This document shows, in pieces, positions 6,420-14,312 of a stretch of 62,759 nt of DNA. The stretch lies in the NCBI RefSeq assembly GCF_032062105.1, contig NW_026940866.1, positions 62,001 through 124,759 of the forward strand. The letters run 5' to 3'. The position numbers and the translations under genes are program-made. How positions within the stretch are numbered: position 1 is the first letter of the stretch; each line of letters begins with the position of its first letter. The notes under the pieces are model-generated. The model did no database searches. It saw only the letters and a program-made list of their open reading frames with translations, and had not been told where the DNA came from. This DNA is from Saccostrea cucullata (taxonomy: Eukaryota).

Positions 6420-7526
6420 TAGAGTTGGGTATTGCGAAGGAAATCCATATTGCGATATATTGCAATATTTTACTTTGAATATTGCAATATATTGCAATAT
6501 ATTGTAGATTAATTATCATTAATAAATTTGAGCAGAATGTTTGAAATGCTGTCAAGTTCAAAGACTATTTGAATTTATCTTTAAGTTTAAAAGCGAGAGG
6601 AGGGATAAGACATTAATTGCACACCAAATTAACACTTTACTTTTAATCAAATTCCAGGTAAAATAGTAAAACAAGATGAACTCTCTTGGAGAATTATCAC
6701 ATTGAAATAATTTTTTCACAGATTATGTCTTTTTTCATTGAATTCTTTTTTTTTTGAGGGGGGGGGGGGTAATGAAGTAGCATAAAATGTTATTAAAGAT
6801 TAAAACAATATACATATTAGGCCTATATGAAAATAATTTTATTGTGGTTACAAAATAAAATTTAAAAACCAGAAAGAAATTGTGACCTGTTTTCGTGCGT
6901 TTTGGCAATTTAGTCTAACCCGACCTAATTTCACATCAAGACGTACAATCAGGAAATGGCCTGTTTTAATATATACATGCTCCTGCTATATCATAAGGTG
7001 TTTAAAATGGCATGAAAGTTATTAAAAATAATTAAAACAACACTGCTACAAGTGAAAACATGGATGACCATTTACTTTTAATATGTACATGTATATTGAA
7101 CTTGACATTTCACCGCGATGTCGATCGTGTAGATTCAATGTGAGATTTTGAGAACCGCAATGCATATGGTATACACCCTGTAAAAATGTTTTATATATTT
7201 TCTTCCTTTTAAATTTTATTTGAAAGTCTTATTAATTAGTAATTTTATTTCAAAGTAAGATATTCAAAACTGCAACAGTGAATTAAAAGCTTCCACCCCT
7301 CTCTCTTTCTCTCTCCCGAACGAAACTGACGAAGAATTCTTTCAACGAGAAAGAAAAAGACTTAGAACTTTCCAGTTTTATTTTAACAGTTTCTACAATA
7401 AAGGAGGTTTATATATATTTTTATAAATATCGTGAAATACCGGTATCTGATTTTCATATCGCGATATATTATCGTGGTGGATAATACCGCAATATACCGA
7501 TATACCGGTAATATTGCACACCCCTA
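6420..7526 (-). mobile_element. 1.1-kb non-autonomous hAT element, copy 1
   Basis: Near-identical reverse complement of 9280-10388; termini TAGGGGTGTGCAATAT / TAGAGTTGGGTATTGC. Its flanks AAAGTTAT and TTGTTCCA do not match each other but match the copy 3 flanks in reverse. Confidence 0.92.
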
Positions 7527-7597
7527 TTGTTCCATGTACATTTTAAAAATTTCTTTGACGAGTAAAACAATATGCGTTTCTTTTTTTGTTTAGTATA
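7527..7597 (-). mobile_element. Displaced 5' end (TIR) of the Tc1-like element at 14313-15113
   Basis: 7571-7597 TATGCGTTTCTTTTTTTGTTTAGTATA matches 15087-15113 at 26/27 nt, in direct rather than inverted orientation. Confidence 0.75.
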
Positions 7598-7815
7598 TTA
7601 TCTAAGAAATCAATATAATTGTACAGAATGACAATAATGTAATTTTGCTTCAGTCATACAGTCATAGCTGAAGTAAAGTTCTATCGCAAATATGAACATC
7701 AGAAGATTATAAATGTTCTTTTTCCCTCTTCTTTAAAAAATTAATTACAATTTTGCAATAGCAAAAAAAAATCTGACATCAAAATTGCAGCTCATATTGC
7801 TTTAATAAATCTTAC

Positions 7816-7984
7816 TTTCGCAGTTGGAATCACTTCTATTGTAGCTGAAATGAGCGTCTTTCAGTTCCTCATAATAACACATCTGCTTAGACTGCGGTCT
7901 TTTAGAAAGGTAGCCTGCGCCATACACTGTATCTGTGTAAAATAAACCGAGTATAAACGTGACTAGTAAGACCCGTGATGCCAT
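7816..7984 (-). CDS. Nacrein-like alpha-carbonic anhydrase, exon 1 (signal peptide); inverted relative to exons 2-11
   Basis: MASRVLLVTFILGLFYTDTVYG-AGYLSKRPQSKQMCYYEELKDAHFSYNRSDSNCE: hydrophobic signal peptide, HFSY motif at the start of the alpha-CA domain, phase-1 donor A|GTAAGA that matches the phase-1 acceptor at 20494. Confidence 0.85.
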
Positions 7985-8018
7985 GCCAGCGGAATAAAGA
8001 AACAACCTAAATCCCCTC

Positions 8019-8026
8019 CTTTTATA
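8019..8026 (-). promoter_or_regulatory. TATA box of the carbonic anhydrase gene
   Basis: TATAAAAG on the minus strand, 35-42 nt upstream of the exon 1 ATG. Confidence 0.6.
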
Positions 8027-10745: not shown

Positions 10746-11202
10746 TGATACATCACATGTATTCAGATGTTTAAAATTTTAATTTCAATCAATAATATAA
10801 TATATATGCATAATATAGCTGTTTATGGAATTTGAAAATTAAAGCACATTTTGTTGCTTTTTTAAAAAATCAAAACTGCTTTCACGTATCCTGTTCCATA
10901 TCCTTTGATGTGTAAAAAAAAACCCCATTGGGCAATCTTAATATTTATGTAACAATTTTAAAAGAAATCCCCTGAGAATTTAGCGTGTGTCACGTCCTTT
11001 GTTGAACAAAATAGTTTGATGTGTATATTTGAACCCTGAAATGTGCAAGTGCAAGGAACGCCCCACATATAGTAATTTTGTTTCGATAATAACAAACGGT
11101 TTTCTCTTCAATATTCTTTCAGTTAAACTTAAATATTTAATCACGCAATATAGAATCTGTATTAAAATCTTTCGTTTATTGAATCTTTTCAAATATATTA
11201 TT

Positions 11203-12367
11203 TTTAGCTCTACTGGTCAGAGACCAGAAGAGCTTATGCGATAGTAATGCGTCCGTCGTCCGTCCGTCTGTCTGTCTGTCAACAATTTTTCAAAATGCTA
11301 CTCCTCCTACAGTTTTGATCCGATTTCAATATAACCTGGCACACAAGTAGACTACACCAAGATACATAATTTTGTGCATCGGTTTATGATTTCGATGAAT
11401 GGTGTTGCCGTGGTTACTAAAAATAGAAATTTCTCTGAAATTCTTTCGAAATGCTACTCCTCCCACAGTTTTTGTCCAATTTCAATATGACTTGGCACAC
11501 AAGTAGACTACACTAAGATACATAATTCTGTGCATGGGTTTTTGATTTCGATTAACGGTGTTGCCGTGGTTACTAAAAATAGAAATTTCTGTGAAATTCT
11601 TTCTAAATGCTACTACTCCTACAGTTTTGGTCTAATTTCAATATAACTTGGCACACAAGTAGACTACACTAAGATACATAATTCTGTGCATTGGTTTTCG
11701 CTTTCGATGAACGGTGTTGCCATGGTTACTAAAAATAGAAATTTCTGAGAAATTCTTTTAAAATGCTACTCCTCCTACAGTTTTGGTCCGATTACAATAT
11801 AATTTGGCACACAAGTAGACTATACTAAGATACATAATTCTGTGCATCGGTTTTTAGCTCTACTGGTCAGAGACCAGAAGAGCTTATGCAATAGTAAGGT
11901 GTCTGTCGTCCGTCCGTCTGTCTGTCTGTCTGTAAACAATTTTTCAAAATGCTACTCCTCCTACAGTTTTGGTCCGATTTCAATGTAACTTGGCACACAA
12001 GTAGACTACACTAAGACACATAATTCTGTGCATCGGTTTTTGATTTCAATGAATGGTGTTGCCGTGGTTACTAAAAATAGAATTTTCTGTGAAATTCCTT
12101 TAAAACACTACTCCTTCTACAGTTTTGGTCTGATTTCAATTTAACTTGGCACACAAGTAGACTACACTAAGATACATTAAATAGTGCATCGGTTTTTGAT
12201 TTTGATGAATGATGTTGCCATTAGTACTAAAAATAGAAATGTCCGTGAAATTCCTTTAAAACATCACTCCTTCTACAGTTTTGGTCTGATTGCAATGGCT
12301 TCTTTTCTTAGCCTTTGTTATAAGTACAAACCAGTAGAGCTACAGTCTCGACAGAGACTTCTGGTTT
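11203..12367 (+). mobile_element. Non-autonomous Helentron-type element with ~156-bp internal repeats and a duplicated head
   Basis: subTIR AGCTCTACTGG / CCAGTAGAGCT, GTCC/GTCT microsatellite, about seven AAATGCTACTCCTCCTACAGTTTTG units, 3' hairpin AGTCTCGACAGAGACT; head repeated at 11851. Confidence 0.85.
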
Positions 12368-13089
12368 AAGGATTTTGATACGTATGTAATCAATTCAATT
12401 GTGAAATGGTTCATATCGTTAGTCCCAATTATTATGATAATTAGAGCCCATGTAACCCCGGGATTTTTCTAAGATTTATGATCTTATTTGTTGAAACCGT
12501 TGCCAAGTAGTTTGGATTCTAAATTGTTAAGATATTGTTAGCAATATGAAGCGATTAATAAGTTGTAAATTATGCACTTAAATATTTAAAATAAATATGA
12601 AGAGGAAGATGGATATGTAACAAATATTTTGATATATGCATATCCCTAGTTAGAATAATCTAACTGTGTCTCGAGAAAAGCCCTCACCACAGTTAGAATA
12701 CCTCCTATATACTCGCAGTGTAGCAAAAAATTGCAGAGTCGCTCCGAAACGATTTTGAAGTATACAAAATAATTTGCAATAAAAATTACTTTCAAATTAA
12801 TTGTTACAAACCTTTTTGAGGTTGCTTTAATATGTATTTAAACCCAAAATATAATCCAAAGAAAGACGAAAATTCAACTAATTTTCTCAACGTTTTTTCT
12901 CGCTTCAAAATTACACTATTTACGTTCGGAATTCTCTGGATTGTTCGTAATGAATGCATTGAGTACTAATTATCGCTCGTGTTTATTTTGCTACATTGTG
13001 AATACATGGAACGAATTCTATCGTTAAATTGGGTCCGTAGAACATTTCTCATTTTAACAATGGAACATTATATCTAGCATATCCAATGT

Positions 13090-13191
13090 TTTTTATGCTC
13101 CCGTAAACAAAGTTTCCGGGGTATTTAGTTTTTGCCCTGTCCGTCCGTCTGTCTGTTTGTCCGTAGAAACATTAACCTTGCCCATAACTTT
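13090..13191 (+). mobile_element. Displaced terminus of the Helentron-type element at 4219-6419
   Basis: Reverse complement reads AAAGTTATGGGCAAGGTTAATGTTTCTACGGACAAACAGACAGACGGACGGACAGGGCAAAA..GGGAGCATAAAAA, the expected continuation after 6419 (compare the ends at 40357-40400 and 51770-51840). Confidence 0.75.
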
Positions 13192-14312
13192 TAGGGGTGT
13201 GCAATATTACCGGTATATCGGTATATTGCGGTATTATCCACCACGATAATATATCGCGATATGAAAATCAGATACCGGTATTTCACGATATTTATAAAAA
13301 TATATATAAACCTCCTTTATTGTAGAAACTGTTAAAATAAAACTGGAAACTTCTAAGTCTTTTTCTTTCTCGTTGAAAGAATTCTTCGTCAGTTTCGTTC
13401 GGGAGAGAGAGGAGAGAGAGAGGGGGTGGACATGGTGGAAGCTTTTAATTCACTGTTGCAGTTTTGAATATCTTACTTTGAAATAAAATTACTAATCAAT
13501 AAGACTTTCAAATAAAATTTATAAGGAAGAAAATATATAAAACATTTTTACAGGGTGTATACCATATGCATTGCGGTTCTCAAAATCTCACATTGAATCT
13601 ACACGATCGACATCGCGGTGAAATGTCAAGTTCAATATACATGTACATATTAAAAGTAAATGGTCATCCATGTTTTCACTTGTAGCAGTGTTGTTTTAAT
13701 TATTTTTAATAACTTTCATGCCATTTTAAACACCTTATGCTATAGCAGGAGCATGTATATATTAAAACAGGCCATTTCCTGATTGTACGTCTTGATGTGA
13801 AATTAGGTCGGGTTAGACTAAATTGCCAAAACGCACGAAAACAGGTCACAATTTCTTTCTGGTTTTTTAAATTTTATTTTGTAACCACAATAAAATTATT
13901 TTCATATAGGCCTAATATGTATATTGTTTTAATCTTTAATAACATTTTATGCTACTTCATTACCCCCCCCCCCCCTCAAAAAAAAAGAATTCAATGAAAA
14001 AAGACATAATCTGTGAAAAAATTATTTCAATGTGATAATTCTCCAAGAGAGTTCATCTTGTTTTACTATTTTACCTGGAATTTGATTAAAAGTAAAGTGT
14101 TAATTTGGTGTGCAATTAATGTCTTATCCCTCCTCTCGCTTTTAAACTTAAAGATAAATTCAAATAGTCTTTGAACTTGACAGCATTTCAAACATTCTGC
14201 TCAAATTTATTAATGATAATTAATCTACAATATATTGCAATATATTGCAATATTCAAAGTAAAATATTGCAATATATCGCAATATGGATTTCCTTCGCAA
14301 TACCCAACTCTA
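13192..14312 (+). mobile_element. 1.1-kb non-autonomous hAT element, copy 3
   Basis: Near-identical to copy 2 apart from a short GA/GGTGGA insertion and a few substitutions in the 5' third; flanks ATAACTTT and TGGAAGAA. Confidence 0.92.

What the first reader, a model, noticed from the sequence alone, without database searches (positions are those of the whole stretch)
6420..14312. MITE-mediated 5.7-kb inversion flips the promoter and signal-peptide exon of a shell carbonic anhydrase away from its gene body
Seen in the sequence: exon 1 (7984-7816) and its TATA box lie on the minus strand, while exons 2-11 (20494-27905) lie on the plus strand and the splice phases match. The segment 7527-13191 is bounded by inverted near-identical 1.1-kb hAT copies. 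Three independent marks show inversion. (1) TSDs are swapped: copy 1 left flank AAAGTTAT is the reverse complement of copy 3 left flank ATAACTTT, and copy 1 right flank TTGTTCCA reverses to TGGAACAA versus copy 3 right flank TGGAAGAA (7/8). (2) The Helentron-type element cut at 6419 resumes reversed at 13191. (3) The two TIRs of a Tc1 remnant (7571-7597, 15087-15113) are now direct repeats. Re-inverting the segment restores both TSD pairs, both host elements and a continuous ~463-aa gene. Inference: a structural null ('off') allele of a biomineralisation gene made by ectopic recombination.
Basis: partly seen in the sequence, partly recalled or inferred. Interest (0 to 1): 0.92.

Follow-up and report, generated by a model that had tools for sequence, protein, structure and literature searches.

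The report
Transposon-flanked inversion breaks oyster shell gene
On one chromosome copy of a rock oyster, a 5.7-kb stretch between two copies of a small jumping element is flipped, so the promoter and first exon of a nacrein-like carbonic anhydrase (a gene family tied to shell building) point away from the rest of the gene; this is a well-documented new case of a known type of mutation, and an assembly error is not yet excluded.

Summary
Observation confirmed. Segment 7527-13191 lies between inverted ~1.1-kb MITE copies with exchanged 8-bp TSDs (joint chance about 2e-8); 20 of 20 other family copies have matching TSDs. New evidence: a second contig of the same assembly (C9035) and the S. echinata ortholog locus both hold exon 1 in sense and lack these MITEs, so the window state is derived and probably heterozygous. 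The restored 463-aa gene is a nacrein-like alpha-carbonic anhydrase (75% identical to XP_061184854; zinc histidines intact; dN/dS 0.11-0.14), so the break is recent. The three MITE copies form a local clade. Copy 3's left part plus copy 1's right part equals copy 2 with no substitution: a weak sign of a crossover, favouring ectopic recombination (0.6) over hybrid-element transposition (0.15). An assembly switch would leave the same sign (0.2). No reads of this species were served, so reality, frequency and silencing are untested; a shell role rests on family membership. The mechanism is known (Galileo and BuT5 inversions; F8 intron-1 inversion), and several intact paralogs exist. The scan returned no such finding on other DNA.

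The parts
6420..7526 (+). MITE copy 1 (1107 bp, non-coding), left breakpoint; left flank AAAGTTAT (site A), right flank TTGTTCCA (site B reversed)
7527..13191 (.). inverted segment, 5665 bp
   Evidence: opposite orientation to its flanks when compared with C9035 and S. echinata locus L071
7527..7597 (-). 5' end (TSD copy plus 63 bp with TIR and TA) of the Tc1-like non-autonomous element in intron 1
   Evidence: 11 of 11 family copies join it to 14313 onward; empty TA site in C9035
7816..7984 (-). exon 1 coding part: start codon, hydrophobic signal-peptide-like N terminus, 56 codons plus 1 nt, donor GTAAGA
   Evidence: aligns to N terminus of P0178
8020..8081 (-). two TATAAAA-type boxes (8026-8020 and about 8080-8074), also present in C9035 and S. 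echinata
   Evidence: consensus match only, start site not mapped
9280..10388 (-). MITE copy 2 (1109 bp), intact with its own TSD CCCGTGTC, about 1.25 kb upstream of exon 1
   Evidence: empty site in C9035
13192..14312 (-). MITE copy 3 (1121 bp), right breakpoint; left flank ATAACTTT (site A reversed), right flank TGGAAGAA (site B, 1 mismatch)
13085..13191 (+). start of the host repeat at site A (T-run, GTCC/GTCT microsatellite; HINE/Helentron-like by resemblance)
   Evidence: continuous with the reverse of 6411-5842 in C9035
5842..6419 (-). remainder of the host repeat at site A
14313..15113 (+). body and 3' TIR of the Tc1-like element (high-copy, 85-92% to about 40 scored copies)
   Evidence: no Pfam hit on its decayed frames
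20494..27905 (+). exons 2-11 of the nacrein-like alpha-CA: 20494-20658, 21132-21316, 21967-22059, 24034-24156, 24448-24561, 24738-24824, 24991-25108, 26982-27208, 27443-27520, 27873-27905
   Evidence: open frame with AG/GT at every junction; PF00194 hits exon by exon; 75% to P0178 over the full length

Best explanation
On one haplotype a Tc1-like element first landed in intron 1 (shown: absent from C9035). One lineage of a non-autonomous, hAT-type DNA transposon then multiplied locally to three copies within 8 kb (shown: one clade; local hopping inferred): site A and site 2 upstream of the promoter in one orientation, site B inside the Tc1-like element in the other. A crossover between the A and B copies, probably between element positions 573 and 789, flipped the 5.7 kb between them (inversion shown in the assembly; crossover inferred). 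Promoter and exon 1 now face away from exons 2-11. The first in-frame Met left in the gene body is residue 172, after two of the three zinc histidines (150, 152), so this allele cannot make a secreted, active enzyme (inferred from structure). It is most likely a young, heterozygous, probably rare loss-of-function allele, buffered by the other haplotype and by paralogs.
For: Exchanged TSDs and opposite orientation; 20/20 controls with matching TSDs; host element restored in 11/11 copies; un-inverted, MITE-free contig C9035 colinear over window -7539 to 20078; S. echinata locus with exon 1 in sense; clade c1+c2+c3 at 100/99 with 23-44 substitutions to all other copies; c3-left + c1-right equals c2 with 0 substitutions, and without a crossover the c3-versus-c2 differences cluster in 160 bp with P about 0.011, against 0.05-0.07 with one; dN/dS 0.11-0.14 in the CA exons and no stop or frameshift, so no decay yet; contiguous sequence without gaps and with distinct copy sequences.
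Against: The chimera signal rests on one SNP (6991) and one A-run indel (6863). An assembler or library switch inside the same identical stretch gives the same pattern. No read of this species was available. C9035 ends about 416 bp before exon 2, and exons 2, 9 and 11 occur only once at high identity in the assembly, so an intact second allele is inferred, not seen whole.
Confidence: 0.6

Rival explanations
1. Assembly or library artefact: the haplotype carries all three MITEs in the ancestral order, the gene is intact, and the assembly switched strands inside the near-identical inverted copies.
For: Four linear paths run through the repeat graph; the ancestral one matches 3 of 3 TSD pairs and the assembled one 1 of 3. 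The reconstructed B copy has no substitution against c2, so the flip has zero measurable age. The gene shows no decay. The assembly is fragmented (23,869 contigs).
Against: Only 1.1 kb must be spanned. There are no gaps, the copies keep private differences, kilobase tandem arrays are resolved in C9035 and 20/20 other copies are joined correctly, which points to long reads; that such reads rarely mis-orient a 1.1-kb repeat is my own knowledge. The assembly method could not be read.
Confidence: 0.2
2. Real inversion made in one step by alternative transposition (hybrid element insertion): ends from two sister-chromatid copies of one donor inserted 5.7 kb away, creating the second copy and the inversion together; c2 is a later daughter of c1.
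For: Gives the same TSD exchange (PMC2775673). Needs one event rather than a hop plus a crossover. The local clade and the tree ((c1,c2),c3) fit.
Against: Predicts identical flanking copies at origin; c1 and c3 differ by 4 substitutions and several indels, and the c3-versus-c2 differences cluster improbably under this tree (P about 0.011). Later gene conversion could hide this.
Confidence: 0.15
3. C9035 is a paralogous duplicate rather than the other allele, or the second haplotype lacks exons 2-11; the animal would then have no intact copy of this gene.
For: 4-12% substitutions between C9035 and the window; exons 2-11 found once.
Against: 28 kb of colinearity; similar contig pairs at other nacrein-like loci differ by 5-9.5%; one close ortholog was found in S. 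echinata; C9035 ends inside a repeat.
Confidence: 0.05

Closest known systems
Galileo-generated inversion 2z3 of Drosophila buzzatii (PMC2775673)
   Same: Two copies of a TIR transposon in opposite orientation, exchanged TSDs, single target copies in non-inverted chromosomes, chimeric copies as the test for ectopic recombination.
   Different: There the inversion is chromosomal, segregates at about 8%, and chimerism rests on 53 sites; here it is 5.7 kb, known from one assembly, and chimerism rests on 1-2 sites.
BuT5 MITE inversions in the D. repleta group (PMC3698922)
   Same: A non-coding MITE of about 1 kb causes inversions.
   Different: P-superfamily MITE; inversions fixed between species; here a hAT-type MITE and a gene split in intron 1.
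F8 intron-1 inversion, CTRB1/CTRB2 (HsInv0030) and ZNF257 (HsInv0379) inversions in humans (PMC4576756, PMC4591017)
   Same: A breakpoint in the first intron separates promoter and exon 1 from the gene body; F8 and HsInv0030 arise between inverted repeats.
   Different: Much larger or between segmental duplications; expression and phenotype were measured; ZNF257 arose by end joining.
Ac/fAc alternative-transposition inversions at maize p1/p2 (PMC8225341)
   Same: hAT elements invert kilobase segments holding a promoter.
   Different: Transposase-driven and gain of expression; here homology-driven loss is favoured.
Oyster nacrein-like proteins F1/F2 (PMC4066178); S. echinata XP_061184854
   Same: Signal peptide, alpha-CA domain with three zinc His, D/E-rich insert in place of Gly-X-Asn.
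   Different: The window gene is a separate paralog: 75% to the S. echinata protein, but one-to-one orthology to F1 or F2 was not resolved.

Membership tests
TE-mediated inversion by ectopic recombination (criteria of PMC2775673) | two homologous copies in opposite orientation at the breakpoints | tested here: met
   c1(+) and c3(-), 98%
TE-mediated inversion by ectopic recombination (criteria of PMC2775673) | exchanged TSDs, single target copy in the non-inverted allele | tested here: met
TE-mediated inversion by ectopic recombination (criteria of PMC2775673) | both flanking copies chimeric | tested here: inconclusive
   pattern fits a crossover at element position 573-789 but rests on one SNP and one homopolymer indel
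TE-mediated inversion by ectopic recombination (criteria of PMC2775673) | junctions present in DNA molecules of the animal | not testable with these tools
   only contigs of a relative at about 92% identity were served
hybrid element insertion | flanking copies identical | tested here: not met
   4 substitutions plus indels between c1 and c3; later divergence or conversion not excluded
hAT non-autonomous element / MITE | 8-bp TSD | tested here: met
   20/20 copies plus c2
hAT non-autonomous element / MITE | short TIRs, subterminal repeats, no ORF, uniform length, many copies | tested here: met
   imperfect TAG(A/G)G ends, ATATTGC repeats near both ends, longest open frame 65 codons; 1101-1136 bp; 65 left-end matches in the genome
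hAT non-autonomous element / MITE | autonomous partner with a hAT transposase and the same ends | tested here: inconclusive
   3.2-kb elements with both ends exist but could not be read; on C12276 one end type lies 2.6 kb upstream of a PF05699 hit on the matching strand
Tc1/mariner (host at site B) | TA target duplication and TIRs | tested here: met
Tc1/mariner (host at site B) | DD34E transposase or recognisable remnant | tested here: inconclusive
   no Pfam hit on four decayed frames
Helentron/HINE (host at site A) | T-rich ends, sub-terminal inverted repeats, microsatellite, no TSD, Rep/helicase partner | tested here: inconclusive
   T-run and GTCC microsatellite seen; the other features were not tested
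nacrein-like alpha-carbonic anhydrase | alpha-CA domain with three zinc His and active-site Glu/Thr | tested here: met
   PF00194; His 150, 152, 175, Glu 162, GSLTTPP motif
nacrein-like alpha-carbonic anhydrase | signal peptide and low-complexity (D/E) insert in the CA domain | tested here: met
   hydrophobic N terminus judged by eye; acidic insert at about 208-280; groups with proteins named nacrein-like
nacrein-like alpha-carbonic anhydrase | mantle expression or presence in shell matrix | not testable with these tools
   no RNA run served; shown only for C. gigas F1/F2 (PMC4066178)

The most novel reading that the evidence does not exclude
The three locally multiplied copies make a reversible switch. 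In the present order c1 and c2 (99.7%, inverted) flank only the promoter and exon 1, so a second crossover would turn the gene back on with 1.25 kb of native promoter; two of the four linear orders put exon 1 in sense. If such flips were frequent in soma or germ line, the locus would give mosaic or recurrent on/off states of a shell-related enzyme. Only the geometry is shown; no recombinase and no second state were seen.
Probability: 0.04. Interest if true: 0.8.

Novelty: new member of a known kind. Interest (0 to 1): 0.36.

Why it matters
If real, it is a fully reconstructable example in a bivalve of how local multiplication of a MITE creates inverted repeats that knock out a conserved gene with no change in coding sequence: a balanced loss-of-function allele that SNP or exon-based surveys miss. 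It offers a natural mutant for one nacrein-like paralog. It also warns that annotation of this assembly will split the gene. It does not reveal a new mechanism, and an effect on shells is likely buffered.

Tried and rejected
Reads: the one run search found only 4 DNA data sets of one other sample (share 0.06-0.07). Laid on 5400-9270 (3,871 letters) they differ by about 8% in unique parts, carry none of this haplotype's joins, and leave the window at 7596, i.e. no Tc1-like insertion there. Alternative plus-strand exon 1: none found by homology on the contig; a non-homologous one is not excluded. Fusion of the flipped exon 1 to a downstream minus-strand exon: strong acceptors give at most 23 open codons in its frame, so no useful fusion protein is predicted. 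Old pseudogene: rejected (dN/dS). The neighbouring OTU-hAT element as the MITE's partner: rejected, different ends. The assembly paper is not held. The bacterial promoter scan is irrelevant to this genome. Full-length homolog searches used stored proteins P0153 and P0178 instead.
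Full report
1. Observation. Self-comparison shows three near-identical copies of a 1.1-kb element: c1 6420-7526(+), c2 9280-10388(-), c3 13192-14312(-). 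c2 has its own 8-bp TSD on both sides. Twenty other copies from the same genome all have perfect 8-bp TSDs, so the exchange is a true exception. All 11 other copies of the Tc1-like host join the reverse of 7535-7597 directly to 14313 onward with one copy of the 8-mer, TGGAACAA in 8 of 11.

2. The ancestral state is in hand. Searching the window's own assembly with exon 1 found a second contig, C9035, with 96% amino-acid identity. It is colinear with window positions -7539 to 20078, but the segment 7596-13192 has the opposite orientation relative to its flanks. It lacks all three MITEs and the Tc1-like element; the empty sites match prediction. After re-inverting the segment in a script and removing the MITEs, one alignment block runs through junction A at 91.6%. 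The S. echinata ortholog locus L071 also has exon 1 on the same strand as exons 2-11. The window state is therefore derived. C9035 differs by 4-12% substitutions, like other contig pairs at nacrein-like loci (5-9.5%), so I read it as the other haplotype. It ends about 416 bp before exon 2, and exons 2, 9 and 11 have only one close match in the assembly, so the intact allele is not seen whole. The organism is very probably Saccostrea cucullata: contig C2747 has the same length (1,758,456) as the contig of proteins so named; this is inference.

3. The gene. Exon 1 plus ten plus-strand exons give an open 463-aa frame with AG/GT at every junction. Single exons hit PF00194. The model aligns end to end with S. 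echinata XP_061184854 (75%), including the exon 1/2 junction. It has a hydrophobic N terminus, His 150/152/175, Glu 162, the GSLTTPP motif and a D/E-rich insert, the features given for oyster nacrein-like proteins F1/F2, which are mantle-expressed; only F1 was found in shell matrix (PMC4066178). Orthology to F1 or F2 is unresolved, so 'shell' is a family-level inference. dN/dS against S. echinata is 0.11-0.14 in the CA exons: the gene was constrained until recently. The first Met after exon 1 is residue 172, past two zinc ligands, so the orphaned body cannot give an active secreted enzyme. Several paralogs with all exons in order exist, four of them in tandem on C2747.

4. Mechanism. The three copies form one clade (100/99) and differ from every other sampled copy by 21-44 substitutions. 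With about 65 left ends in 1.17 Gb, three within 8 kb means local multiplication (inferred). Exchanged TSDs arise both from ectopic recombination and from hybrid element insertion; the test is chimeric versus identical copies (PMC2775673). c1 and c3 are not identical. c2 equals c3 over the left 790 bp and c1 over the rest; joining c3-left to c1-right gives c2 with no substitution. Without a crossover the c3-versus-c2 differences cluster in 160 bp (P about 0.011); with a crossover at element position 573-789 the spread is less odd (P 0.05-0.07). This favours recombination between a site-A and a site-B copy after c2 arose, but it rests on one SNP and one homopolymer indel. Order of events: Tc1-like insertion, MITE insertions, inversion. 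That the Tc1-like element preceded copy B, and both breakpoint sites preceded or coincided with the inversion, follows from nesting; the place of c2 is inferred.

5. The open doubt. The same chimera pattern, and an age of zero, are what an assembly or library switch would leave. Four linear paths run through the three-copy repeat graph; the assembled one matches 1 of 3 TSD pairs and the ancestral one 3 of 3. Against an artefact: no gaps, private differences kept in each copy, long tandem arrays resolved, and all control copies joined correctly. No reads of this species were served; the four data sets found are one sample of a relative. I put the artefact at 0.2.

6. Comparison. It works like the Galileo and BuT5 inversions of Drosophila (PMC2775673, PMC3698922) and, in its effect on the gene, like the human F8 intron-1, CTRB1/2 and ZNF257 inversions (PMC4576756, PMC4591017). 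Two of the three published criteria for ectopic recombination are met; the third is inconclusive. TE-driven structural variation is described as abundant in oysters (10.64898/2026.02.10.705023). My paper searches found no report of this allele; the library lacks most subscription journals.

7. Verdict. A real feature of the assembly, probably a real young heterozygous null allele, made by a known mechanism: new member of a known kind, interest 0.36. An earlier scan note on the same stretch proposes a multi-state switch; the geometry allows it, but nothing shows that it happens. The spliced model was searched exon by exon by reference only; the joined search step was left out.

Noticed in passing
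window 1-2376 plus 2.1 kb upstream (G000:C23003 about 59860-64376): A 4.5-kb hAT element absent from C9035, with an 8-bp TSD (AATGCATC/AATGCATG; single copy in C9035) and an open 1063-aa frame on the minus strand carrying OTU (PF02338), zf-C17orf113 and hAT dimerisation domains; ends differ from the MITE's.
   Followed up: partly
G000:C5956:28926-32090, C11223:16470-19642, C21707:223605-226815: Three elements of about 3.2 kb with both MITE ends; candidate autonomous partners, not read.
   Followed up: no
G000:C11488:5390-8709: Two longer members of the same MITE family head to head, left ends 123 bp apart: a second case of local multiplication.
   Followed up: no
G000:C2747 about 1533800-1578900: Tandem array of four nacrein-like paralogs; C4266 looks like its haplotig (0.8-2% substitutions).
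   Followed up: partly
window -7539 to 20078 versus C9035: The two presumed haplotypes differ by 4-12% substitutions and at least ten transposon-sized insertions in 28 kb.
   Followed up: partly
window 24034-24824 (exons 5-7): The acidic insert ends in a basic run RRKRR, a possible proprotein-convertase site, also present in the S. echinata ortholog.
   Followed up: no
window 53958-59049: Split 100% direct repeats (163 bp and 132 bp); an earlier scan note calls this a young Ngaro retrotransposon.
   Followed up: no
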